Shown here one piece after another: positions 1-14,230 of a stretch of 64,000 nt of DNA. Below the pieces are notes generated by a model. It had not been told where the DNA came from. It was given only the letters and a program-made list of their open reading frames with translations, and did no database searches. The translations under genes were made by a program, and so were the position numbers. Numbering within the stretch: the stretch's first letter is position 1; every line of letters begins with the position of its first letter. The stretch comes from Ostrea edulis (taxonomy: Eukaryota), in contig NC_079172.1 in the NCBI RefSeq assembly GCF_947568905.1, positions 43,586,001 to 43,650,000 on the forward strand, in the 5' to 3' direction.

Positions 1-560
1 CTGTTCATATATAAACAAGACGACCTTAAACTGTTCATAAACAAGATGACCTTAAACTCCTGTAAATCAATGATAACCTCACACAAGATGCTGCTCAAAT
101 AAATGCCTGATGTACATAAAAATATCACACATTATTTTTTAAGGAGAAAGTATTACATACTGTGTATGTCCCACAAATCAATTTTTATTCTCACTGTTTC
201 ACTGCAGACCAAAACTATGTAATTCAAAACTACAGTGAATAAAATCTATTCATATTTAGATATACTGTATACTTTAATTAACAATAGAAGTTAATTAAAC
301 TGTGGATTTATATTGGTGTGGAAGTGGATTTAGATTTTAAAAAAAACAAAACATGAAATTAACCTGTCTGGAATCAACAGCTTTACAATTCATATAAAAC
401 CTTTCGAATCTTCTGAAAATGTGTAGTGCTTTATAAACTGTAAAGAAATGGTTTTAATTAGGTGTTTGAGATATTTTCAAGAAGTTTTTCATCCCAAAAT
501 TATTTTATGCATATAGATGCACGGAATCTATGTTAAGTACAAAATGTTGAGAACTTCAAA

Positions 561-791
561 TGAATTTTGTAGATAGTTGATAAATTGAAATGAATTTTGT
601 AGATAGTTGATAAATTGAAATGAATTTTGTAGATAGGTGATAAATTGAAATGAATTTTGTAGATAGGTGATAAATTGAAATGAATTTTGTAGATAGGTGA
701 TAAATTGAAATGAATTTTGTAGATAGGTGATAAATTGAAATGAATTTTGTAGATAGGTGATAAATTGAAATGAATTTTGTAGATAGGTGAT
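561..791 (+). repeat. 30-bp minisatellite (about 8 copies) spanning the exon A acceptor
   Basis: Unit TGAATTTTGTAGATAG(G/T)TGATAAATTGAAA; AG dinucleotides at 572, 602 and so on to 782. Confidence 0.95.
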
Positions 792-884
792 ATAGATGGA
801 GAGGAGAGTTTGAATCTGACAACTACAACACTTAAGAGGTGCAAACAGCAGGTGCTTCGTCCATACTGGCGACTTCTTATGTTT
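783..884 (+). CDS. GRL exon A (IGDIDGEESLNLTTTTLKRCKQQVLRPYWRLLMF)
   Basis: ttttgtAG acceptor at 781-782; GTAAGT donor at 885; phase 0 into the next exon. An alternative acceptor at 794-795 is possible. Confidence 0.75.
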
Positions 885-3800
885 GTAAGTGTTATAAATC
901 AATATAAATTAATCCTCTCATGCTGGGAATTCTTGTGTTAGTGAGTATTATAAAGAGATTATACAATGCTCCTCTCATGCTGGGAATTCTCATGTTAGTA
1001 TTATAAAGAGATTACACAATGCTCCTCACATGCTGGGAATTCTTATGTTAGTATTATAAAGAGATTATACAATGCTCCTCTCATGCTGGAAATTATCATG
1101 TTAGTATTATAAAGAGATTACACAATGCTCCTCTCATGCTGGGAATTCTATGTTAGTATCATATAGAGATACAATACTGATCCTCTCATGCTGGGAATTC
1201 TCATGTTAGTATCATATAGAGATTACACAATGCTCCTCTCATGCTGGGAATTCTATGTTAGTATCATATAGAGATTACACAATGCTCCTCTCATGCTGGG
1301 AATTCTGTGTTAGTATTATAAAGAGATTATACAATGCTCCTCTCATGCTGGGAATTCTCATGTTAGTAAGTATTATAGATTACAGAATACTCCTCTTATG
1401 CTGGATGTCATTTTACATGAATATAAAGGAATTTTTTTTCTCGAAAAATTCTTACTCAGATCAGCATGGCCATGTTAGTCATATTGATTTTGAGGCATCC
1501 TCACATTGTGTGGATTCAAGTTCAATTAAGTCACATCACCATGCAGTACGTAGGGGTCATGATATGAAATCAAAAATTTGTCGTTGGGCTAAAGAGAGTA
1601 GAGATCTTAAAACAATCGGAAGCAAGTTGACTTGGTGGACATTGTTACTAAATGATGCATAATGCTCCTGCAATGCTGGAAACACCCAATGCTTATAAGT
1701 ATTATATAGAATACACAATCCTTTGGCCATGTTGAAGACTTTTCATGTTTGAAAGTATTACTTAATATACAATATGCCCTGGCCATGCATGTGATTTTGC
1801 ATGTTTGTGAGTATTAGGCATTATACATTAGTGGAAAGTATCAATATTGTATGTCTATGTGAAAGAACAATATGATAAAGCTCTAGGCAGTATTGGTTAA
1901 ATGTCTTATGTCTCAACTATATACTATATGTGTGTGAGCATGCAAGTGAGTGTATGTGTGTGAACATGTGTGTGTGTGTGTGTGTGTGTGTGAACGTGCA
2001 TGTGTGTACAGTGTGTGTGTGTATGTGTGTGTGCAGAGATAAACTTGCATGTATACTGCTGGTGGATATTTTAGTTTTTACATTGACAAGTAGTCCTGAA
2101 ATTCGTTTCTTGGTGACCATGATATTTTATTCCGTCCCAGACACAAACAGATGGATGGACAGAAAGACGGACGGACAAACACTGGACAAAGTGATCCCCA
2201 TGTGTCTGCCATATGCTTTGCAGGTGATGCAGAATCACAGCAGTAAATTCCATGCCATCTCCATTAATGATTACATATTTGACTTTTGTAGATTGGATGG
2301 CGGGGGTTCGGCAGGGAGTCTGTTCACTTTACCAGTAAAAGATTGACTGTGTTGAACGTCGTGTACCCTATATTTGTTGTCTGCTTGTTACTGTATACCT
2401 ATGTTTATGAGATTGTTGCGTGTCAATGGAAACTGGATCTTCACAAGGATACTCAGGTAAGACGTCATGTCTCGGACGTCACTCAGGTGAAACAGATGTC
2501 ATGTCTCGGATATCTAGATGTTTTATCCCACTTACTGGTAGATGCAGTTACAATGTATTGGTAGAAAGCACAAAAATCTTGTAATGTGATTTTTTTTCAT
2601 TTAAATGACAGATGTTAATTAAATTAAATTAAATATTGATTAACCTTAATCTGATCTGACTGATTAACCATTATCATATTCTGGTTTTCCTTAATTCTCT
2701 TCTGTCGGAGGAAGATCTGGAGGCCTATTAATTGTACTAAAGCCAGTCTGTCTTTTGGTTAACAACTTTAACTTTGGCCATTATCTTTTGAACCATAAAT
2801 ATAAAGATGAAGACTTCATGTATGATCCATGGTTAGGTCTAATAAAAAGCTTGTTTGAGATTGCCTTTGATGTCAAAGGGTGTAGCCTTTATTTCGTTTT
2901 CAGCAATAACTTGATAGAGTGTGTTTATATTTGCACCATGGCTGGAGCAATGAAAACTTTGTCTCAGATATTGTATTTGATATCAAAGGGTGGCATTTGT
3001 TACTAAAGATAAATATTTAGTTTCTTAGCAATACTTTAAAAAGGGTTTGAACATAATTGATTGGTGTAATGAAAATCTTGTCTGAGATTGCCTTTGGGAT
3101 CATGGGTCCTAGGGTGTGGCCTCTGTTGCTAAAAATAAATGTTTAAGATTTCTGCATTAGAACCAGGCTATAATGGTCCCTTTATGGGAATTTTGTTCAA
3201 ATTTTGTAGGATTGTTAGTCACCAAATGTAGTTGATCACATTCCACCGCCATTTTGATTTGTCAAATTTTACAGGAGTTATGGGACTTTGTTGAATTTGT
3301 ACATTCGACTACACTATAGGATTAACACTTTGTGGACACAATCCCTCAGTGACCACTATACAGATTTTGTTCAAGTTATGCAGGATTGTTATTCACAATA
3401 TGTAGTTGGACATATTCCACCGCAATTTTGATTCTACGAATTTTACAGTAGTTATTGGACTTTTGTGCAACTTTTTTTGTGTTGGTGGGGGACATATGGC
3501 TACACGTACACATAGCAGTCTTGTTACTTTTGCTTTGTAGCTTCCTCTCTGTTAGTTGTATAGTGTGACTTATTTGTCTTTTTACTTTAATCTGTTAATC
3601 AGAAATACATAGATGCAAATCCTGCACATGTGTAATGAATAATGTATTACAGTGTATCTCATGCTAAGATGAGCTTAATATGCAGTACTAGTGGAATGAT
3701 CTATCGGTGCATCGTGATACTCATCTTCAGTTGGCTATGTATGGATAAATACACATGTCTGTTAAATGATGATACCTGTCATAGCGTTTTCCAAAAGTAT

Positions 3801-4133
3801 CAGAACATCACAAGTCGGGTATTTTCAGTCCGCCAAGTAGAAAATAAAGGTAGAACTACAACAAAACATGGCGGACTACATAATCCGACTGGAAGCAAGT
3901 CAGGGGTATGGGAGAGGTTTGGCTTATCAGTTTATAAAAGGGAAAACGGTGTAAGAAACATTGATAAAACAAGTTTTTGCAAGATGTTTGGAGCATCGTG
4001 ATACTTATTTTATTCTAGATGAGTATCTAGCTGAATATTGATTGATATTTTTTCTGTTTTGTTTGGAATTGAATAAATTTGAAATCCTTTCTCTATAGTT
4101 ATGCCCCCGAGATCAAAGATTGGGGGGGGGGGG

Positions 4134-4164
<31 letters not shown>

Positions 4165-7100
4165 TAAAAATTTAACCTTGCTAATAACTTTTGAACAGTA
4201 AGTGCTAGAGCTTTGATATTTCATATGAGTATTCCTACAGTGACAAGACCTTTCTGTGGGTACTAAACCTTTTGACCTTGGCATTTGACCTACTTTTAAA
4301 AAATTTGACATTGGTCATAACTTCTAAATGGTAAATATTAGAGCTCTCATATTGCACATAAGCATTTCATGTGACAAGATCTTTCTACTGCTACCAAGAT
4401 ATTTGTCCTTGTGACCTTTATGGAGCGCCAAATTACATAAACTCAAATAATTGAAGATGTCTTCAATTATTTGAAGATATCATCAATTCATTTGATGCGC
4501 GCAACAATTTAATTAAAGATCCCTTCAAATAATTAATGATATCTTCAATTCTGAATTATTGCACGCATTAATTGAATTGATGATAGCATTAATTCTGCAG
4601 CTGAATTGATGCGGCTTTAATTGAATTGATGATCTCTTCAAATGAATTAATGATATCAACAATTGAATTGATGCGCGCTACAATTCAATTGAAGAGAGCA
4701 ATAATTGATATAATGCACGCATTAAATCAATTGATGAGAGCAATAATTGAATTGATGCGCGCATTAATTCATTTGATGAGAGCAATAATTGATTTAATGC
4801 ACGCATTAATTCAATTATTGCTCTCTTTAATTGAATTAATATCTTTAATTCATTTGAAGAGAGCAATAATTCTTTTAGAGAGAGCAACTATATAATTAAA
4901 GATATTTTCAATTCAACATATCCACAATTGAATTAATGATCTCTTTAATTGAATTGTTGCTCTCTTTAAAAGAATTGATGCGCGCATTAATTCCTTATAC
5001 AAAAGCATTGTAAATAATTAAAAATATCTTCAATTAAATTAAAGAGATCATCAAATTATTTATACCGAGCTCTAAATTAATTATTGCGAGCAATATTTCT
5101 ACGAAATTGATGCTCTCATCAATTGAATTGAAGAGAGCAATAATTGAATTAATGTGTGCATCAAATCTATTATTGCTCTCATTAATTCAATTGATGCTCT
5201 CATCAATTGAATTGAAGAGAGCAATAATTGAATTAATGTGCACAGTAAATCAATTATTGCTCTCATTAATTCAATTGATGCGTGCATTAATTCAATTGAT
5301 GAAAGCAATAATTGAATTGAAGTGTGCATTAATTCATTTGATGAGAGCAATAAATGATTTAATGCGTGCATTAATTCAATTGAAGAGAGCAATAATTGAA
5401 TTGAAGATATCTTCAATTATTTGAGTTTATGTTAATTTGGTGCTCCATAGACCTTGGCCATCTTTGAAATTGGTCATTATCGGGGGCATTTGTGTTTTAC
5501 AAACGCATCTTGTTTTTATTGATGTGCAAAGTATCGCGATATGTATCGTATCGTGTGTCAAGTATTGTGATACGTATTGGATCGGCTAGAAAGGGTATCA
5601 TCCCACTCCTACTTGGCAGGGTGTATTTTTCTGATTAGTACAGCCCACGGCTGCGTTTTAGATCATAGCAACTAGCCTAGCTGCTAGGCTAGATATCTAG
5701 GTCTATTGAAGGCAATGTATGAATTAACGCTTGTTATCCCTACATAGGGCTAGCCTAGATGTTTGTTTAATTTCATACCACTATCTAGCACTATGTAGGT
5801 AATATGATCTTGAACGCACTGGTCTGAATCCTGATAATTTTGTTATTTCTTGTAGGTCATCACTACAACTACCACCACTCCTGAGTCCACAGAAGCAAAT
5901 ATTAGTACCACAATGACGGGAGGTCAGAGTGTGGCCACACTGACCTTAGGCTCACCCCAGAATCTCACCAGCATGCACTGGATCGCCCCGTCTGAGCGTC
6001 CCGAGGCCTGTAAGCACATCATCACTACGTACGTCATTCCCAACACTCTCCACTTTGTGGCATACATTATGGGGATGGTTCACTTCAGACTACAAGAGAA
6101 TGAACAACTGTATGCCATCATGGAAAAGGCAGGTTTTTGTAGATCTCTTCCCTATTCTCTAGTTTAGACAAATTGTTGTATGATTATAAGGCAGGTTTTA
6201 GTAGATCTCTTCCCTATTCTCTAGTTTAGACAAATTGTTGTATGATTATAAGGAAGGTTTTTGTAAATCTCTTTCCTATTCTCTTAAGTTTAGACAAATT
6301 GTTGTATGATTATAAGGTAGGTTTTTGTAGATCTCTTCCCTATTTTCTAATTTAGACAAATTGTTGTATGATTATAAGGCAGGTTTTTGTAAATCTCTTT
6401 CCTATTCTCTTAAGTTTAGACAAATTGTTGTATGATTATAAGGCAGGTTTTTGTAAATCTCTTTCCTATTCTCTTAAGTTTAGACAAATTGCTGTATGAT
6501 TTTATTATATGTGTACAGAAGGATAGCAGTTTTGTCACATATTATTTCAGTACCAAAGTGATTTCAGCCCCTATTTGTATCATCCTGTGCCATTTCATCA
6601 CTGTAGATTATATAGTTCTTTTTAATCCTAGTTTAAAATTCGCCTCATGATGTTTGGAGCAATTTGATTGTGTGCTAAATGCATCGATGTGAAAACATCC
6701 TCTGTGTACAAGACTGAAAAAGCAAGTGCAATGAATATTTTATCAGATACAGTTTGTGTTGTACTCCAGCTGATGTGTAGCTAATAAGGTATGGGACAGC
6801 TGGAATATAGAATTGATGCTTGGTACTGGTAATATGAGCATTTTGATACCATATAGGTTTCTGGGTACTGATTTGGACCAATTTTGATGAATGGTTCCAA
6901 ATTGCTGAAATTTATATCTATATAGAAGATATTACGGGAGGATCATCAAACTAAGGAGGATTATCATACCTTCATCTCTTCAATTCATCAAACTTTGTAT
7001 CCACCACAAACGTCTGCCATACAGTATTCGAGCTCATAGTTTTGATGTTAAAACTGACATTTAAATTTTACTGTAGGTTTTCCTACAAGCCACACCATCA

Positions 7101-10100
7101 TATAGCAGAACAGCATCCCAGCAAAAGATGATCAAGAAGCTTAGGTGTGTATTTGTGTTATCAGGTAGTAATGAAAACACAGACCAGTGCGAAGTCGAAA
7201 GTGAGGTTTGTTTTCTCTTTTTGACATCTCAGTTTGACCTATGGGTTGGTAGTGTTAATATTCTATTTTAGAAACTAAAAAAATAAGAAAAATTTAAGGA
7301 GGGACATTGAATTAGCAGATCAATTTTATTTTATTTAGTTTATGATACAGCATAAACAAAATGTGGAGTCAATTTGCATTGCATAAAAATCTGAAATATG
7401 TTTTGAAATTTGAAATGACAGATTTAATTTTCTGTAAATAAATTAAATAGCATAAAAAATTTTGATGAAGAGTTGGTGCATTTTATCAACCTGGTCAAAA
7501 ATGGAAAAGAAATAAACCTTTGCTGAATGATTTAATCAGCTTTTGGACATTCAATCAAGTTTTCAATCACTTGATAATGGGTAGAAATTAAGTGATTTCT
7601 TTTTTATTTAAAGGATACTGATGGCCGTGGGTGCAATCTGGGTGGCTGTCACGTTAGTGATGCAGGGACTGTATGAGTTTGCCTTTGACTTCCCCAAACT
7701 GCTCTTCTTTAAAAAAGTAGGGTAAGAGATTTTATATTTATATAAAAAAGACTTTTGGGAAACTCCATATTGTGTCCATGAAATTTTTTAATTTCTGTTT
7801 TATATTATGAATATCCATTAGGTGTTATTTCTGTTTAACAGTATGACTGTTCATTAGGTGTTATTTATATTTTACAATATGATTATTCATTAGATGTTAT
7901 TTCTGTTTTATAGTATGACTGTTCATTGGGTGCTATTTCTGGGGTTTTCTGTTTAACATTATGAATATTCATTAGGTATTATTTCTGTTTTATAGTATGA
8001 CTGTTCAGGGCTGTCACTGTCCTTTTTGGTACAGGGTCCCATTAGATTGGGAAAATTATCGACGTTTTGGGTCAAATTGGGAAATTTTACTTTCATACAA
8101 TGATTTTAAAAGACAGACAAAAACAATATCTAGTAAGTTCAATTAGGTTTTATTTTTCAATTGATCACCTGGCTGCCAATCTATAAAGAGACTAGAGGTC
8201 TCTTGCGCAACTTTTCGGGCCTTGTCGAAAATGCGCAAGAAGTTATAAGTGAAAACGAAACTAACATGATTTAATTTTTTTTTTATACACACAATGAAAC
8301 AGTTTATGATATTGGGAATTTCTAGGCAAATAAATTGGGAATTTTGGGATTTTTTCCCAATTGGGAAGGGTCCGTTTATCGGACCCAATTCAAAGTGATT
8401 GAAGGCCCTGCTGTTTATTGGGTGCTATTTCTGTTTTACATTATGAATATTCATTAGGTGTTATTTCTGTTTTATAGTATGACTGTTCATTGGGTGTTAT
8501 TTCTGTTTTATAGTATGACTGTTCATTGGGTGCTATTTCTGTTTTATAGTATGACTGCTCATTGGGTGCTATTTCTGTTTTATAGTATGACTGCTCATTG
8601 GGTGTTATTTCTGTTTTATAGTATGACTGTTCATTGGGTGCTATTTCTGTTTTATAGTATGACTGTTCATTGGGTGCTATTTCTGTTTTATAGTATGACT
8701 GTTCATTGGGTGCTATTCAGTATTGAACTACTGGGAATCCTTATCCTGAACTCGGTGACATTGGCAGTGATAGCAAATTATGTTACACACTGTGAGATGG
8801 CCCTGTTCTACCTGAAGGGTCTGGCTCTCAGATTGCAGGAGAAGTCCTCAGAACTCAAGGCAGCAATGAAGGTCAGTTAAAAAAATCACACACTAAGTGC
8901 ACACTATTGCATTTGAAATATTTCATGGACTTTAGAAATAAATTTCAAAGCACAAACTAGTGTGATTTATATTGAATTAGTTCATATTTTTAAGTATCTG
9001 AAATGTATATCAATTTCAAGGAATATGTCAAGGAAAAATATTTATTTGATGAAGTCCTTTAATGTTCATGTGGGAGACTTTTAACTTATATGGAGATGTA
9101 AGTGAAATCTTTTGATAGAATATGTAATTTCACTCATGATACGATTCACTGAACACAAACTTTGTGAATGATCTTGTCTTGGTTGTAGGACCTTCTGTTC
9201 ATCAAACAGAACGTGAGTTTACTGAATGGACCAGTGGCGAGAATGACTGCTCTCATATCCGTCATATTTGCTGAACTCACTATCATTGGTATGCTTAATT
9301 TTAAAGGGACTGGTTCACGATTTTTGATAAAAATATTTTTCCTTTTTTATCGTAAACATTAAAAATATAACTAATTTAATGCTGACAGCCAAAATTTTGA
9401 CCTTCTGAATGCAAGAATAATAGCAATATTTTAGCCTTAAATCTGTGTTATGTAAACAAAGACTCGAGTCTATTTATGTATACAAACAAACAAGTGATTT
9501 CAGAAATATTGATTTTGTAATATAAAACATCTTAATTTTGCATAATCTCAAATTTGAACTTCTAAATGACACATTTTGTCCCAAAAATGCTTGAAATGTG
9601 AAGATATAATAAACTTAGATCGATATCCGTTTCTTTTAAAAATTTCGTAAAAAATAGCATACCCCAATCTTTGTTTACAAAACAAATAATAAACTCTCTA
9701 AAATGAGCTTCTGTGATAATGTATACCCTTAATTTTTATGTGAACTCTTTTAAACACATTAGACAGAAGATTTTGATCATTAAAAGTGAAAAAGAAAATT
9801 TTAGGGAAAATCGTGAATTAGTCCCTTTAAGATTTATTTCTAGAGTTGGTTGAAAAATACTGTATCCTTGCAGCAAATCATAGGAATATAGAAGCATTTA
9901 TCAATAAAATTGCAAAGGAAAACCAAACTTCGAAGAATAGATATTATCATTTTAAATGTTGATGGTGGTATGTAACAAACTTAATTTGTTTAAAGCAAAA
10001 TTATAATGTTTTATGTAGTTTGCCAGGAAAAGATCAAAAATTTTACACCTTCAAGATTTATAAACTGGTATCGTTTTTGGTCTGTCTGTTTGGATAATTC

Positions 10101-12281
10101 AACAATGGCCATAGCTACAATGTATATACAAGGCAGAAAGCTTGGTATTTGGTGAACAGAATGGTATATGATGTATCAGTAGGTCAAGGTCAAATTTTAT
10201 CTACAATTTAACTCTTAATGCAATCAGAGTCGTAGTGTTTCATGAACATGATTTGTTCTGATTGTTGGAGAATACAAGAGACTTGCCATTACATTTATAT
10301 ACAATATATTACAAATACAAGAGACTTGCAATTACATGTATATACAATATATTACAGGTATTGTTATTCTGGTACTGAACAAAAATGATTCCTTAAAAGT
10401 GTGGATATACAGGAGTTTCTTCCCTTTAGTTTGGCTCTTCATTCTTGTTGCTCCATTGTACCAGGTAAATCTTATATCATTTCATTATATTGGTCTTCTG
10501 TACATTTAATGAAACTCGAAGAAAGGTTGAATACATTGATAAAGTACAGTAAAACCCTGTTATCTCGAACTCGATGTGACTGAGAAAAAACTTTGAGATA
10601 TCTAAGGATTCGAGATGTCAAGGTTAAATTACTTAAAGAATAAGTTCTTTGGGACTTCGGAATCACTTCGACATATTTAAGGTATTCGAAATATTGGTGT
10701 TCGAGATATTTAAGTTCAACTGTATTTGAATTACGTTGCAGGCAGCTCGAGTGAACTCGGTGTCAATAAGAATGAAGAAAATAGCCCTAGAGATGAAGGT
10801 CTTTGGGTACAAGAATTCCTCACAGCTAGAACTGGATTCCTTCATCTTGTTTGTCAGTGAGGCTAGGATGAAGGTAATACAAGTCTTATTCTTCTAGAAT
10901 TCCTCAAAAGCTCTCTCAGCAAAACTGATACAAGTTTGTGAGCATGTTCATCTGAGTACAAAACTTGTATTCAGTTGCTCTTATTTATCCCGTCATTTAG
11001 TTTCTTGACTCCATGTTTACAGTAACAATAAAATGGCAAACATTACAAATGTATACAGTGAAACCTGTCTAATCCGACATACACTGGAAGACATTAAGTA
11101 CAGTGAAACCTGTCAAATCCGATATACACTGATAGACATTAAGTACAGTGAAACCTGTCTAATCCGACATACACTGGAAGACATTAAGTACAGTGAAACC
11201 TGTCTAATCTGACATACACTGGGATACATTAAGTACAGTGAAACCTGTCAAATCCGATATACACTGATAGACATTAAGTACAGTGAAACCTGTCTAATCC
11301 AACATACACTGATAGACATTATAGGGACTCATTCACGATTTTCCTCCAACTTTTGTTTTTCACTTTAAATGTTCAAAATCTACTGTCCAATATGTTTAGA
11401 AGGTTTCACAAAAAAATCAGGTTATTCATCATGACAGAAGCTCATGATAGAGAGTTTGTTATTTGTTTTGAAAACAAAGATTGAGGTGTGTTATTGTTTA
11501 CAGGGTTTTCAAAATATATGGATATTGATCCAAGTTTAGTATATATATCACGTCTCAAGTATACTTTAGGTAAAATGTGTCATTTAAAAGTTAAAATTTG
11601 TGATTGTACAAAATGAAGATGCTTTAAATTACAAAATTAATGTTTCACTGGTTTGTTTGTTTACATAAAAAGACTCGAGACTTTGTTTACATAAAACAGA
11701 ATCAAAGCTAAAATATTGCTCTTATCCTTGCAATCAGACGGTCCAAATTTTGGTTGTCATCATTAAATAAGCTATATTTTTAATTTGTAACATCAAAAAT
11801 GAAAACATTTTTTTCGAAAAACATGAACCAGTCCCTTTAAGTACAGTGAAACCTGTCTAATCCGACATACACTGGGAGACATTAAGTACAGTGAAACCTT
11901 TCTAATCCGACATACACTGGGATACATTAAGTACAGTGAAACCTGTCTTATTCAACATACACTGAGAGATAAATTTTAGTCAGAATACAGAGTGTGTCAG
12001 AATAAACAGTGTAAACAACAATGAAATGAAATTTAGATTGACAATAAAGGGTCAGAATCCCCAGTGAAACAGATTGCATAGGTGTCAGATTAGGCAGTCT
12101 TCATTGCATTAGATTGCACTTTCTTGTTATCTAATGAAAACTTGATCTTCTATTTCAGGCTAAGCTTTTCCACATTCCCATTCTGCCTCGGTATCTGATA
12201 GCAGTGTTTGTCCTAGGCTCCTTCATTCTTCTGGTCCTGTTCCAAACCAGCGTCATAGGTCCTGTCAACTACTGGTTCTAG
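783..12281 (+). CDS. Gustatory-receptor-like 7TM ion channel (GRL/7TMIC) gene, 5'-partial; join(783-884,2292-2456,5856-6128,7077-7144,7614-7721,8694-8871,9189-9288,10358-10464,10742-10873,12159-12281)
   Basis: Ten phase-compatible exons (1356 nt, 451 aa plus stop) joined by GT-AG introns and one GC-AG intron. Seven hydrophobic segments. The C-terminus ELDSFILFVSEARMK|AKLFHIPILPRYLIAVFVLGSFILLVLFQT resembles the GR/GRL TM7 region (TY-hhhh-QF-like). Family assignment is from recalled motifs, not a search. Confidence 0.82.
913..1410 (+). repeat. About 52-57-bp minisatellite (about 10 copies), intronic
   Basis: Unit TCCTCTCATGCTGGGAATTCTCATGTTAGTATTATAAAGAGATTACACAATGC. Confidence 0.9.
1925..2035. 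repeat. Interrupted (GT)n microsatellite
   Basis: Seen directly. Confidence 0.9.
2098..2228 (+). mobile_element. 3' end of Pearl/CvA-like (Helentron-type non-autonomous) element
   Basis: ACRG-type microsatellite (acagatggatggacagaaagacggacggac) followed by a gtgatccccatgtgtc...gcaggtga terminal segment. Confidence 0.55.
2292..2456 (+). CDS. GRL exon B (IGWRGFGRES...LHKDTQ; TM1)
   Basis: ttttgtAG acceptor, GTAAGA donor, 55 codons with a hydrophobic helix. Confidence 0.85.
4099..5514 (+). mobile_element. Helentron-type non-autonomous element (HINE/Pearl-like), interrupted by an IS3EU-like insertion
   Basis: Subterminal IR ATGCCCCCGA/TCGGGGGCAT, 3' hairpin tgtgttttacaaacgca, T-rich flanks. 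Confidence 0.7.
4419..5449. mobile_element. Non-autonomous foldback DNA transposon, IS3EU-like
   Basis: About 40-bp TIR TATGGAGCGCCAAATT.../...AATTTGGTGCTCCATA; 6-bp TSD GACCTT (4413-4418, 5450-5455). TAY...RTA termini with a 6-bp TSD fit IS3EU. Confidence 0.7.
5856..6128 (+). CDS. GRL exon C (Thr-rich extracellular loop, TM2, ...LYAIMEK)
   Basis: ttcttgtAG acceptor, 91 codons. Ends at AAG|GCAGGT, a GC donor required by the phase of the next exon. Confidence 0.8.
6126..6501 (+). repeat. 62-64-bp minisatellite (6 copies) beginning at the exon C donor
   Basis: Unit AAGGCAGGTTTTTGTAGATCTCTTCCCTATTCTCTAGTTTAGACAAATTGTTGTATGATTAT at 6126, 6188, 6250, 6314, 6376 and 6440. Confidence 0.95.
7077..7144 (+). 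CDS. GRL exon D (VFLQATPSYSRTASQQKMIKKLR)
   Basis: ctgtAG acceptor; GTGTGT donor in phase 2, matching the next exon. Confidence 0.75.
7614..7721 (+). CDS. GRL exon E (TM3, ILMAVGAIWVAVTLVMQGLY...)
   Basis: Poly-T acceptor, GTAAGA donor, phase 2/2. Confidence 0.85.
7795..8720 (+). repeat. 36-bp minisatellite built from the exon F acceptor; degenerate 5' part and homogeneous 3' part split by an insertion
   Basis: Unit TTCTGTTTTATAGTATGACTGTTCATTGGGTGCTAT. Confidence 0.95.
8006..8410. mobile_element. Small TIR element (CAGGGC...GCCCTG) inserted in the 36-bp array
   Basis: Short TIR; CTGTT duplicated at 8001-8005 and 8411-8415. Superfamily uncertain (hAT-like ends, atypical TSD length). Confidence 0.55.
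8694..8871 (+). CDS. GRL exon F (TM4, MTVHWVLFSIELLGILILNS...AAMK); 5' boundary ambiguous in 36-nt steps
   Basis: Last of seven identical ttctgttttatAG acceptors; GTCAGT donor at 8872. Confidence 0.8.
9189..9288 (+). CDS. GRL exon G (DLLFIKQNVSLLNGPVARMTALISVIFAELTII)
   Basis: ttgtAG acceptor, GTATGC donor, phase 0/1. Confidence 0.85.
9305..9826 (+). mobile_element. Kolobok-like non-autonomous element
   Basis: TTAA TSD on both sides; TIR AGGGACTGGTTCACGATTTT/AAAATCGTGAATTAGTCCCT. Confidence 0.75.
10358..10464 (+). CDS. GRL exon H (end of TM5, TM6, ...VAPLYQ)
   Basis: ttacAG acceptor, GTAAAT donor, phase 1/0. Confidence 0.85.
10547..10722. mobile_element. Tc1/mariner (Tigger-like) MITE
   Basis: TA|CAGT...ACTG|TA termini; internal ctcgaac/gttcgag IR. 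Confidence 0.65.
10742..10873 (+). CDS. GRL exon I (AARVNSVSIRMKK...ELDSFILFVSEARMK)
   Basis: ttgcAG acceptor, GTAATA donor, 44 codons, phase 0/0. Confidence 0.85.
11052..11970 (+). repeat. 45-bp tandem array derived from a MITE left end, interrupted by a Kolobok-like element
   Basis: Unit TACAGTGAAACCTGTCTAATCCGACATACACTG(G/A)...GACATTAAG. Confidence 0.85.
11323..11836 (-). mobile_element. Kolobok-like non-autonomous element, inverted relative of 9305-9826
   Basis: AGGGACT...AGTCCCT termini, TTAT/TTAA flanks; interior is reverse-complement similar to 9305-9826. Confidence 0.7.
12159..12281 (+). CDS. GRL terminal exon J (TM7, AKLFHIPILPRY...VLFQTSVIGPVNYWF*)
   Basis: tatttcAG acceptor; TAG stop at 12279-12281. 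Confidence 0.85.
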   Translation, partial: AKLFHIPILPRYLIAVFVLGSFILLVLFQTSVIGPVNYWF

Positions 12282-14230
12282 TCAATGACAAGAAACTCAC
12301 ACAAGTACAGGCCCTGTCAACCACTAGTTCTAGTCAATGACAAAGAAACTCACACAAATACTCGAGGATAGTCAATGACAAAAATCTCGCACAAATACTC
12401 GAGGATCAGCTGTGATCCAGTGAGGCTTAGTTTTATTGGTCCGCTACCAAGAAAGACGAAGGCAATAACTAGTTTCTGCTCCGTCTGTACGTGCCACTGT
12501 CCTTCTTTCAAAACTTTATTCTCTAGACTTTTTCCCTCATCATGCTTTGATGAAGGGAGCTGGAATTTTGTTTATGATATGATAATATATGTTTACAGAT
12601 AAAGTTTTAAGTTTTGTCACAGTTGACTGATCGATTTTGAGATTTTTGTAGTGAAGGTAGTTTCGTAGACTTTTTTTTCTATTCTGCTTTAATTTAGGAA
12701 ACTGAAATTTGATATGTGGTTTTCTTATAAGGAGATACAGATTACACCTTATTTTCATTGTTGACTCATTCTAACAAAAATTGTAAGACATAGTTTTATG
12801 GTTGAGTGAACGTCTTTAAGTCTTGTAGTCTGTCTAGTTCTCTGTACCTTTTTTTGTGAAATCCATGTAAGTTACTGAAATAAAATTCATCTTCATTCTT
12901 TTTTATAATTAAACAGTGGACTGTTGGCATAAGATCATTCAGACAGATTATTCATGTAAAATATCACGTGAACAATTAAACCTGTGGGGGACATATATTG
13001 CTTGCTATACTTACAGATTTTGCTTGTTTAAATTCAGTTACTATGATAAATGTCTTAGTGTTGATTGTAAATGATTTAAGACTGATTACTCCAAAACAAT
13101 TGGTGTCAAGTTTTTGATGATGTTCAGTTTTCTTCTTTTTTATATTTGAATGACAAAATAACTCTAATAGAAGCCTGGGGGTGGGTGGGTGGGTGGGTGG
13201 GGGCAAAATCACTCTAATAGAAGCCTGGGGGGTGGGGGTAAAATCACTCTAATAGAAGCCCGGGGGATGGGGGTGGGGGATTTTTACCATTAGATAACAA
13301 TGATATGTACTACCAAACACTCCATGTATTACTGTGTTCATGTTACAATGATGTCACAATAATTGCTAATGTCATTTTAATAATAAACTGTTTGTTTTTG
13401 TGTATGCATTTCACTTAATATCTTGTCACACTAAAATATTGATGAACTCTGACCTCATATTTTGAAGCACATATTGGTGTACATGAACATTCTCTATGTG
13501 TAGGTAATATCTACTTATGTAAGTTACACAGCTCGGTGTAATAATTAAATTACCTGGTATCTTTGTTTCGATTGGTATGTTTGACAATACACAAGGAGAT
13601 TGGAATTTGATATTTATAATGTATGGTGTTTGCTGTATGACAATCTGCACAATGAGATTGGGAATTTGATATTATGTATGGTTTGATTGGTATGTTTGAC
13701 AATACACAAGGAGATTTGGAATTTGATATTATGTATGGTTTGATTGCTGTTTGTGTGATTGCTATATGGTTTTTTTTATGTATGCTTCACTTTATACACA
13801 TCCAAAATAGAATGTCATTTATGGTTGTTTCAAGGGAGGAAACTCCTGTACTGTATACACAGTGTAGGATTCTGCTGAGAGTTGTACATTATTGTGTTAT
13901 TACTGTGTATTTGTAGTCAACTTCAATTTATAATTATACACATGCACTTATAGATCAATATACATCAAAGACTGTTCTGTGATAAATAATTGTTAAAAAT
14001 CAGCCATTACTTTGTTGAATATTGGATTTATATTTATGCAATGATAATCTATATTATACATGTTGTAAGTAACTTTACAATATGATTGCTATATATTATG
14101 TTGTGGCTTGTCTCTGTTACATTTGTAGCTGAGATACCAATACAATTTGTTGAAATGTTAATAAAATAATTGTGAATTTCAGAAGTGTGTTTGTTCCAAA
14201 TTGTCATAGTAGATTTATAGAATGCCAAAA

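What the first reader, a model, noticed from the sequence alone, without database searches (positions are those of the whole stretch)
783..12281. Multi-exon gustatory-receptor-like 7TM ion channel gene, invisible in the ORF track
Seen: ten short exons splice in phase into a 451-aa product with seven hydrophobic helices, a long Thr-rich first extracellular loop and a TM7 ending SFILLVLFQT; the last two introns are phase 0. Established: insect GR/OR channels and their GRL relatives have a TY-hhhh-QF-type TM7 and phase-0 introns near the C-terminus, and non-arthropod GRLs are poorly characterised. Inference: this is a molluscan GRL, possibly a ligand-gated cation channel.
Basis: partly seen in the sequence, partly recalled or inferred. 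Interest (0 to 1): 0.7.

Follow-up and report, generated by a model that had tools for sequence, protein, structure and literature searches.

The report
Flat-oyster GrlHz seven-helix channel-like gene

Summary
The exon chain is real. Ten exons (783-12281, + strand) join in frame into 451 aa, identical to residues 72-522 of RefSeq [quoted passage not shown]. Base 783 is a splice acceptor, not a start; 71 more residues are encoded upstream of the window.

It is not a canonical sequence-defined GRL:
- no Pfam 7tm_7 match;
- no profile similarity to the two canonical oyster GRL loci;
- the TM7 motif is off register.

It is single-copy and conserved from sponges to amphioxus. Its direct orthologues (C. 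virginica LOC111099567, scallop, limpet, Hydra and others) are in the published GrlHz (GrlHolozoa, Drosophila CG3831) data set of Benton & Himmel 2023. The gene is therefore the O. edulis GrlHz orthologue, a known family of unknown function.

Spliced contigs from two probable RNA runs fit the chain, including a GC-AG intron 3 and the exon-6 acceptor at 8694.

Two sibling notes cover repeats in this same gene.

The parts
783..884 (+). Coding exon, residues 72-105 of the 522-aa protein. An internal exon, not the first: AG acceptor at 781-782, donor GTAAGT.
   Evidence: homologues continue N-terminally; upstream exons found
2292..2456 (+). Coding exon, residues 106-160. Encodes TM1.
   Evidence: helix 121-152 in the model
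5856..6128 (+). Coding exon, residues 161-251. Encodes the Thr-rich, glycosylation-site-bearing outer loop 1, TM2 and the conserved ENEQLYAIMEK motif.
6129..6134 (+). GC donor (GCAGGT) of intron 3, a GC-AG intron. It is also the first unit of a 62-bp x6 tandem array (6126-6501).
   Evidence: The GC is present in an independent DNA contig (X7, 6069-6190, no differences). Exon 4 measures 68 nt in the RNA-like contigs, which requires this phase-0 donor.
7077..7144 (+). Coding exon, residues 252-274 (VFLQATPSYS...).
   Evidence: Depth arithmetic gives 68 nt in both X1 and X2. Homologues read MEKVFLQA.
7614..7721 (+). Coding exon, residues 274-310. Encodes TM3.
   Evidence: a contig piece ends at 7721 (table 3)
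8694..8871 (+). Coding exon, residues 310-369. Encodes TM4 and its cytoplasmic extension. The acceptor is the last of seven in-frame TTTTATAG copies in a 36-bp array.
   Evidence: contig pieces start at 8693/8694 in X1 and X2 (table 8)
9189..9288 (+). Coding exon, residues 370-403. Encodes the TM5 cytoplasmic part and the start of TM5.
   Evidence: contig letter count across exons 7+8
10358..10464 (+). Coding exon, residues 403-438. Encodes the end of TM5 and TM6. Followed by a phase-0 intron.
10742..10873 (+). Coding exon, residues 439-482. Encodes the TM6 cytoplasmic extension and TM7a (conserved FGY...LDSF). Followed by a phase-0 intron.
   Evidence: contig piece 10739-10874
12159..12281 (+). 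Last coding exon, residues 483-522 plus stop TAG (12279-12281). Encodes the AKLFHIP turn and TM7b with the conserved F504, L509, Q511 and T512.
12282..12629 (+). 3' untranslated region, at least about 350 nt. Length is inferred; the far end was not mapped.
   Evidence: The X1 contig has 471 letters after its exon-9 piece, that is 123 coding plus about 348. X1 and X2 hold words of 12159-12880.

Best explanation
The locus is the Ostrea edulis orthologue of GrlHz (GrlHolozoa; Drosophila CG3831). GrlHz is the single-copy, animal-wide branch of the seven-transmembrane ion channel (7TMIC, Class-A) superfamily that also holds insect Or, Gr and Orco. The gene has at least 12 coding exons, ten of them in the window, and encodes a 522-aa protein.

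Shown: identity with the RefSeq model, the Or/Gr fold, single copy in this genome, the pan-metazoan spread, and membership of the published GrlHz orthologue set.

Inferred architecture:
- a disordered cytoplasmic N-terminus of about 75 residues;
- seven helices with the N-terminus inside;
- a glycosylated outer loop 1, probably clamped by the near-invariant C149-C212 pair;
- long cytoplasmic extensions of TM4-6 plus TM7a, which in Orco and the Grs form the 'anchor' that holds a tetramer together;
- TM7b, which lines the pore in those channels, here with a conserved Gln (Q511) near its outer end.

Inferred function (about even odds): it assembles as a tetrameric cation channel. The gating ligand would be conserved and probably endogenous. 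The argument is that polar residues inside TM1, 2, 4 and 6 are invariant from sponge to oyster, while true chemoreceptors diverge fast. It would then act in general cell physiology rather than in sensing the environment.
For: The exon join equals P0137 residues 72-522. P0137 is RefSeq LOC125659305 isoform X2 of O. edulis.

Only this locus matches in the 895-Mb genome; the next hit has E 0.05 and contains stops.

Homologues at 30-83% identity occur in bivalves, gastropods, chiton, nemerteans, bryozoans, brachiopod, rotifers, chelicerates, a millipede, echinoderms, hemichordates, amphioxus, cnidarians and a sponge.

K+R count is 35 on the proposed inner segments against 9 on the outer ones. The NIS and NLT sequons sit in outer loop 1.

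Benton & Himmel 2023 (PMC9998090) define GrlHz. The GrlHz source-data trees and FASTA files contain C. virginica LOC111099567 (=P0136, 82% identical to the oyster protein), P. maximus LOC117342308 (=P0127), M. yessoensis LOC110461386 (=P0128), Lottia LOTGIDRAFT_235407 (=P0158), Hydra XP_047130201.1 (=P0079), Acanthaster XP_022093404.1 (=P0102) and Anneissia XP_033117936.1 (=P0124), together with Dmel CG3831 and Capsaspora.

Protein-language-model neighbours are clusters named 'Gustatory receptor', followed by 7tm_7 and DUF3537 clusters.

Spliced contigs of 1899 and 1066 nt in two probable RNA runs fit the chain.
Against: No tool aligned the oyster protein directly to Drosophila CG3831. The link runs through named orthologues in the paper's files and through motifs read by eye in its FASTA.

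No pancrustacean member turned up in my word-based searches.

Channel function is untested for any GrlHz. The authors themselves say a quite different activity cannot be excluded.

The family lacks the canonical TM7 motif and any profile similarity to canonical GRLs or to solved Or/Gr sequences, so convergence of fold is not formally excluded.

The model is a monomer; tetramer formation was not predicted.

X1 and X2 are only guessed to be RNA, and the species label of X1/X2 differs from that of the DNA runs.
Confidence: 0.9

Rival explanations
1. A canonical chemosensory GRL: a mollusc taste/smell receptor channel tuned to environmental chemicals.
For: Same fold as insect Grs. UniRef auto-names several orthologues 'Gustatory receptor'. 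A phase-0 intron lies just before the TM7b exon, as in Grs (PMC9998090).
Against: The gene is single-copy. It is 82% identical between oyster genera and 30-45% identical to sponge, cnidarian and amphioxus proteins, which is unlike fast-evolving receptor repertoires.

PF08395 does not hit it, but does hit two other loci in the same genome. hhalign against those loci gives probability 0.3%. The TM7 motif is out of register. Drosophila GrlHz is broadly expressed in non-neuronal tissues.
Confidence: 0.07
2. A protein with the 7TMIC fold that is not an ion channel, for example a scaffold, a transporter-like protein or an organelle-membrane protein.
For: No GrlHz has been assayed, and the authors leave this open. 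The canonical pore-helix motif is absent. The 75-residue disordered N-terminus and the conserved helix 79-106 could be interaction modules.
Against: The model keeps all the parts that build the tetrameric channel in Orco and the Grs: long TM4-6 extensions, split TM7a/7b, and a conserved polar Gln in TM7b. It aligns over about 350 of about 380 residues with solved channels.
Confidence: 0.4
3. A GPCR-type seven-helix receptor, or an artefactual gene model stitched from chance ORFs.
For: Seven helices. One homologue, P0015, carries a 7tm_1 match.
Against: No GPCR appears among the fold matches. Charge bias and sequons put the N-terminus inside. The 7tm_1 match of P0015 lies after residue 371 of a 587-aa model whose match to this family lies at residues 258-348, so P0015 is probably a fused gene model. 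The exon join equals an independent RefSeq model, fits the spliced contigs, and is conserved exon by exon in five other bivalves.
Confidence: 0.01

Closest known systems
GrlHz / GrlHolozoa (Drosophila melanogaster CG3831, UniProt Q9W1W8; Benton & Himmel 2023, eLife, PMC9998090)
   Different: The O. edulis gene itself (LOC125659305) is not in the paper's files. There is no WD40 N-terminal domain, which only a subset of GrlHz proteins has. The gene structure (GC-AG intron, repeat arrays at exon borders) is specific to this species.
Insect gustatory and odorant receptor channels with solved structures (Gr43a 8jm9, Gr64a 8jme, BmGr9 8uvt, Orco 6c70, MhOR5 7lic)
   Different: Only 8-14% identity. 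No HMM or Pfam match. The TM7 motif TYhhhhhQF is replaced by x-F-h6-Q-T. An extra disordered N-terminus of about 75 residues and a long Thr-rich outer loop 1. Single-copy and slowly evolving.
Canonical non-insect GRLs (Pfam 7tm_7, e.g. the two loci on contig C3 of this genome; Nematostella Grl1)
   Same: Same superfamily by fold, as inferred in the literature. Found in animals.
   Different: Those loci are hit by PF08395 and this gene is not. Profile-profile comparison with them gives nothing.
PHTF and plant DUF3537 proteins (other 7TMIC branches)
   Same: Same fold class. DUF3537 clusters appear among the language-model neighbours.
   Different: No PF12056 match. PHTF is placed in Class-B, whereas GrlHz is placed in Class-A with the Grs (bioRxiv 10.1101/2023.08.30.555482).

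Membership tests
7TMIC superfamily (insect Or/Gr/Orco fold) | Tertiary structure matches solved Or/Gr/Orco subunits over most of the chain | tested here: met
7TMIC superfamily (insect Or/Gr/Orco fold) | Seven TM helices with an intracellular N-terminus and mostly longer inner than outer loops | tested here: met
   Seven membrane-length helices in the model. K+R 35 inside against 9 outside. Inner loops are 34, 52 and 55 aa; outer loops are 16, 9 and 11 aa, apart from the glycosylation-site-bearing 69-aa loop 1. No dedicated topology predictor was available, so this rests on the positive-inside rule.
7TMIC superfamily (insect Or/Gr/Orco fold) | Cytoplasmic anchor: long extensions of TM4-6 and a split TM7a/TM7b | tested here: met
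   Helices 311-358, 364-408 and 415-459, then 466-478 (7a) and 492-511 (7b), in the model.
7TMIC superfamily (insect Or/Gr/Orco fold) | Forms a tetrameric ligand-gated cation channel | not testable with these tools
   Only a monomer could be predicted. No GrlHz has been assayed (PMC9998090).
Canonical Gr/GRL family (Pfam 7tm_7 PF08395 / Trehalose_recp PF06151) | Significant match to the family profile | tested here: not met
   No Pfam family for P0137 or for 26 homologues, even at E up to 10. PF08395 run on the whole genome hits two loci on C3 and not this one.
Canonical Gr/GRL family (Pfam 7tm_7 PF08395 / Trehalose_recp PF06151) | TM7 motif TYhhhhhQF | tested here: not met
   Family consensus at 503-512 is (A/T/S)-F-h-L-L-I-L-h-Q-T, with F504 in 35/48, Q511 in 43/48 and T512 in 37/48 sequences. 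F and Q are 7 apart instead of 6, and there is no aromatic residue after Q. Whether Q511 sits at the pore position of the Gr Gln was not resolved.
Canonical Gr/GRL family (Pfam 7tm_7 PF08395 / Trehalose_recp PF06151) | [quoted passage not shown] | tested here: inconclusive
   The introns after residues 438 and 482 are phase 0, and the last one lies between TM7a and TM7b. But 6 of the 9 introns are phase 0. No alignment to Grs could be made to show positional homology. The third ancestral intron, after TM7, is absent.
Canonical Gr/GRL family (Pfam 7tm_7 PF08395 / Trehalose_recp PF06151) | Detectable profile similarity to canonical GRLs of the same genome or to solved Grs | tested here: not met
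   hhalign of A1 against A2: probability 0.3%. The HMM of A1 against all PDB sequences returns no Or/Gr chain.
GrlHz (GrlHolozoa, CG3831 orthologue group) | Close orthologues are members of the published GrlHz set | tested here: met
   P0136, P0127, P0128, P0158, P0144, P0154, P0168, P0079, P0102, P0124 and P0069 carry the same LOC or accession names as tips of the paper's Figure 3-supplement 1 trees and entries of the GrlHz-Dmel-CG3831 FASTA.
GrlHz (GrlHolozoa, CG3831 orthologue group) | Conserved across animals including cephalochordates; low copy number | tested here: met
   Spread across taxa. One locus in this genome.
GrlHz (GrlHolozoa, CG3831 orthologue group) | Direct significant alignment to Drosophila CG3831 | not tested
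   No referenced copy of the fly protein was available to the tools. Only shared motifs were read by eye in the supplement text.

The most novel reading that the evidence does not exclude
GrlHz may keep two gene-level marks of Gr ancestry that the literature has not used. One is the phase-0 intron directly before the TM7b exon. The other is a shifted but animal-wide conserved F...Q-T signature in the pore helix. Together with an invariant polar pocket in TM1/2/4/6, these would make it a tetrameric channel gated by a conserved endogenous small molecule in non-sensory cells. That would be the 'housekeeping' ancestor-like form of the insect chemoreceptor channels.
Probability: 0.2. Interest if true: 0.45.

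Novelty: already known. Interest (0 to 1): 0.2.

Why it matters
It matters little as a discovery. The gene is annotated in RefSeq as 'uncharacterized', and its family was named and placed in the insect-chemoreceptor channel superfamily in 2023, with oyster, scallop and limpet orthologues in the published trees.

The result is still useful in three ways:
- It gives LOC125659305 a family name.
- It shows that the first-stage reader can rebuild a ten-exon gene correctly from raw sequence, including a GC-AG intron.
- It warns that 'Gr-like' here does not mean chemoreceptor.

GrlHz remains a conserved animal protein without a known function, so an oyster or other marine-invertebrate expression atlas or a channel assay would be of real, if modest, interest.

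Tried and rejected
- Pfam on each exon separately: blank apart from a chance Pescadillo hit.
- My first borders for exon 4 (7077-7164) gave two in-frame stops.
- An all-GT alternative (exon 3 to 6132, exon 4 from 7090) is open. I rejected it because it loses 'VFLQ', which P0137 and all homologues have, and because the RNA-like contigs measure exon 4 at 68 nt, not 55.
- Exon 6 from 8721: rejected for the same reasons.
- Word search with exon 3 returned only exon-sized genomic ORFs of relatives, so the full library search was needed.
- Family HMM against PDB sequences: only chance RIPK2 CARD hits at E about 0.9.
- hhalign against the two canonical oyster GRL ORFs: nothing. Intron homology with Grs could therefore not be tested.
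- Looking for the TM7 exon of those GRLs in the 1.5-kb flanks: none found.
- P0110 (947 aa) as a possible WD40-bearing form: it is an Ig-domain protein matched through low-complexity sequence.
- A search from the horseshoe-crab member found chelicerates and a millipede but no insects or crustaceans.
- The intron ORF 3642-4001 has no Pfam family.
- Paper search for the LOC numbers of the oyster and scallop orthologues: no main-text mention.
- Read laying did not print the intron joints among its 15 shown rows. Splice support therefore comes from contig pieces, piece ends and depth arithmetic, not from listed joints.

The joined exon model was never sent to any search, fold or family tool. It was only translated and compared inside a local script. 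All whole-protein work used the identical database protein P0137 by its id.
Full report
**What is in the sequence**

Reading 1-13500 and translating candidate exons in a script showed a + strand gene of short exons with AG/GT borders.

My own first borders failed at two places. Exon 4 taken to the GT at 7165 gave two in-frame stops, and exon 6 taken from 8721 turned out too short.

The chain that works is:
- 783-884
- 2292-2456
- 5856-6128
- 7077-7144
- 7614-7721
- 8694-8871
- 9189-9288
- 10358-10464
- 10742-10873
- 12159-12281

That is 1356 nt, or 451 codons plus TAG.

The chain needs a GC donor after exon 3 (AAG|GCAGGT at 6129). It also needs the last of seven in-frame TTTTATAG acceptors of a 36-bp array for exon 6.

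Six of the nine introns in the window are phase 0, including the last two.

**The product is incomplete**

Base 783 follows an AG and an in-frame TAG. The exon has no usable ATG.

A search of the window's own genome with the full protein placed residues 14-74 at G000:C9:43584723-43584905. The coding part of that exon ends about 1.1 kb before window base 1. A further exon carrying KMMGYA lies about 1.8 kb before it.

**Which gene it is**

Pfam on each exon was blank. The word search with exon 3, given by reference, found only exon-sized genomic ORFs of related bivalves. All of these read ...QLYAIMEK and then run on into a GT intron.

The full library search with exon 3 found 114 proteins, many of 430-590 aa. 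A word search from one of them listed named orthologues. Among them was P0137, 'uncharacterized protein LOC125659305 isoform X2 [Ostrea edulis]'. The exon join is identical to its residues 72-522.

The joined model itself was never handed to a search tool. From here on I used P0137 by its id.

Exon by exon, the window matches the orthologues of C. virginica, Saccostrea, Pecten, Mytilus and Mercenaria in the same order. In the 895-Mb genome only this locus matches.

**Transcript evidence**

No run on record as RNA holds the 3' end. Two runs guessed to be RNA (X1, X2; another species label, a few SNPs) and several DNA runs do hold it.

Laid on 6069-12068, X1 and X2 have depth only over exons and over high-copy repeats. 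They have none over unique intron sequence, which the DNA runs X3 and X7 do cover (table 2).

One X1 contig of 1899 nt and one X2 contig of 1066 nt carry both exon 6 (from 8693/8694) and exon 9. The contig letters between those two pieces fit exons 7 and 8 (100 + 107 nt) (table 8).

Dividing bin depth by contig depth gives 68 nt for exon 4 in both runs and 109 nt for exon 5. It gives about 58 nt of exon 3 from base 6069, where 60 are expected up to 6128. Piece ends fall at 7721 and 8693 (table 3).

This fits the GC-AG intron and the 8694 acceptor, and not the alternatives. A DNA contig of X7 covers 6069-6190 without a difference, so the GC is not an assembly slip.

The tool did not print the intron joints among its 15 shown rows, so this support is indirect. 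Junctions 1-2, 2-3 and 9-10 were outside the 6000-base limit.

Full-length orthologues on 1.8-2.2-kb Logan contigs (P0129-P0133) look like assembled transcripts of other bivalves.

**Fold and topology**

I aligned P0137 with 47 homologues (A1, mean column identity 33%). The AlphaFold2 model has pLDDT 78.7 and pTM 0.77. Only residues 1-76 and 176-200 are disordered.

| Search | Or/Gr/Orco hits | What comes next |
|---|---|---|
| Foldseek against the PDB | 20 best entries (AaegOR10, Gr43a, BmGr9, Gr64a, MhOR5, AgamOR28, Orco), prob 1.00, target TM 0.47-0.69 | E jumps from 4e-3 to above 0.1 |

The model shows the long TM4, TM5 and TM6 helices (45-48 residues) and the split TM7a/7b of these channels.

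With the seven helices placed as in the model, the N-terminus and loops 2, 4 and 6 hold 35 K+R. Loops 1, 3, 5 and the C-terminus hold 9. The two sequons NIS and NLT lie in loop 1. That is N-in, the opposite of a GPCR. No GPCR appears among the fold matches.

**Family membership**

Sequence tests against the canonical Gr/GRL family failed:
- P0137 and 26 homologues have no Pfam match, even at E up to 10.
- PF08395 run over the whole genome hits two intron-poor loci on C3 and not this gene.
- hhalign of the family against those two ORFs gives probability 0.3%.
- The family HMM finds no Or/Gr chain among PDB sequences.
- The TM7 consensus is x-F-h-L-L-I-L-h-Q-T, with F and Q seven apart. This is not TYhhhhhQF, the canonical motif quoted in PMC9998090.

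The phase-0 intron just before the TM7b exon recalls the 'second ancestral Gr intron' of that paper. I could not show that the positions are homologous.

**What the family is**

The homologues span sponge (Oscarella), Hydra and Hydractinia, crinoid and starfish, acorn worms, three amphioxus species, rotifers, bryozoans, brachiopod, nemerteans, chiton, gastropods, bivalves, horseshoe crab, scorpion, spiders, a tick and a millipede. Identity to the oyster protein is 30-83%.

That pattern is the one described for GrlHz (GrlHolozoa, Drosophila CG3831) by Benton & Himmel 2023. They describe it as:
- a 7TMIC-fold protein with homologues across Holozoa, including Branchiostoma;
- broadly expressed in non-neuronal fly tissues;
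- of unknown function.

The paper's Figure 3-supplement 1 source files and its GrlHz-Dmel-CG3831 FASTA name the same proteins I had retrieved: C. virginica LOC111099567, C. gigas LOC105343036, P. maximus LOC117342308, M. yessoensis LOC110461386, Lottia LOTGIDRAFT_235407, Gigantopelta LOC121375421, Aplysia LOC106012012, Hydra XP_047130201.1, Acanthaster XP_022093404.1, Anneissia XP_033117936.1 and Centruroides LOC111612574. They sit there in one tree with Dmel CG3831, Capsaspora and Sphaeroforma.

The fly sequence printed there shows the family's motifs. The O. edulis LOC number itself is absent from the files.

A later preprint places GrlHz in Class-A eukaryotic 7TMICs together with Or, Gr and DUF3537. 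Language-model neighbours of P0137 agree: clusters named 'Gustatory receptor' come first, then 7tm_7 and DUF3537 clusters.

**How it probably works**

Shown: the fold, the topology indicators, the conservation and the single copy.

Inferred:
- a tetramer held by the TM4-7a anchor, with TM7b lining a pore;
- a gate near the conserved Q511;
- an outer loop 1 that is glycosylated and probably clamped by the near-invariant C149-C212 pair;
- a binding pocket lined by near-invariant polar residues (N127, Y130, H214, Y219, P222, H226, N338, Q342, Y420, R421).

The constancy of that pocket from sponge to oyster argues for a conserved, probably endogenous, ligand rather than environmental chemicals.

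I put orthology with GrlHz at about 0.9, a channel function at about 0.5, and an external chemoreceptor role below 0.1.

**Verdict**

The fold-level interpretation is right. The family-level reading needs correcting from 'poorly characterised molluscan GRL' to 'oyster orthologue of the already described GrlHz'. Interest is low.

Two sibling notes (s1-292138, s1-292226) concern the repeat arrays at this gene's exon borders. Those I only touched in passing.

Noticed in passing
window 558-792, 913-1404, 6126-6501, 8411-8717, 10271-10356, 12257-12361: Six tandem arrays (30, 53, 62, 36, 43 and 52-bp units) touch or lie within 30 nt of exon borders of this one gene. They sit at the exon-1 acceptor, just after the exon-1 donor, at the exon-3 GC donor, at the exon-6 acceptor, at the exon-8 acceptor and across the stop codon. 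Several units duplicate the splice site itself. This is the subject of sibling notes s1-292138 and s1-292226.
   Followed up: partly
window 8478-8694: There are seven in-frame TTTTATAG acceptors 36 nt apart. Each upstream one would add 12 residues without a stop. The RefSeq model and the assembled contigs of X1 and X2 use only the last one, 8694. Contigs drop rare forms, so minor use of the others is not excluded.
   Followed up: partly
window 6129-6130: Intron 3 is GC-AG in this oyster. The orthologous exon in related bivalves runs on into a GT: ORFs P0001-P0011 all read ...MEK then V. The GC is confirmed in an independent DNA run (X7). A GT four bases downstream is not used.
   Followed up: partly
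window 9321-9837 and 11312-11821: A very high-copy element of about 520 nt lies in intron 7, and an inverted copy of it (81-84% complementary) lies in intron 9, bracketing exons 8 and 9. Contig depth over them reaches about 1e6 in the DNA runs. Inverted repeats that flank exons can favour back-splicing; this was not tested.
   Followed up: no
G000:C3:14674256-14675101 and G000:C3:14600925-14601788 (L021, L022): Two canonical 7tm_7 (PF08395) gustatory-receptor-like loci lie about 73 kb apart in the same genome. Each is a single long ORF of 357-368 aa, and they are 49% identical. Both end ...GAK(L/V)(H/N)SQ just before an intron. Their TM7 exons were not found within 1.5 kb.
   Followed up: partly
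window 4531-5404: Intron 2 holds two blocks of 21/42/84-bp AT-rich tandem repeats (AATTGATG...). They read as open frames on both strands, which explains several spurious 69-105-aa ORFs in the ORF list.
   Followed up: no
protein P0015 (587 aa): This homologue carries a rhodopsin-type 7tm_1 match after residue 371. Its match to this family lies at residues 258-348, so it is most likely a gene model that fuses a GrlHz gene with a neighbouring GPCR gene.
   Followed up: no
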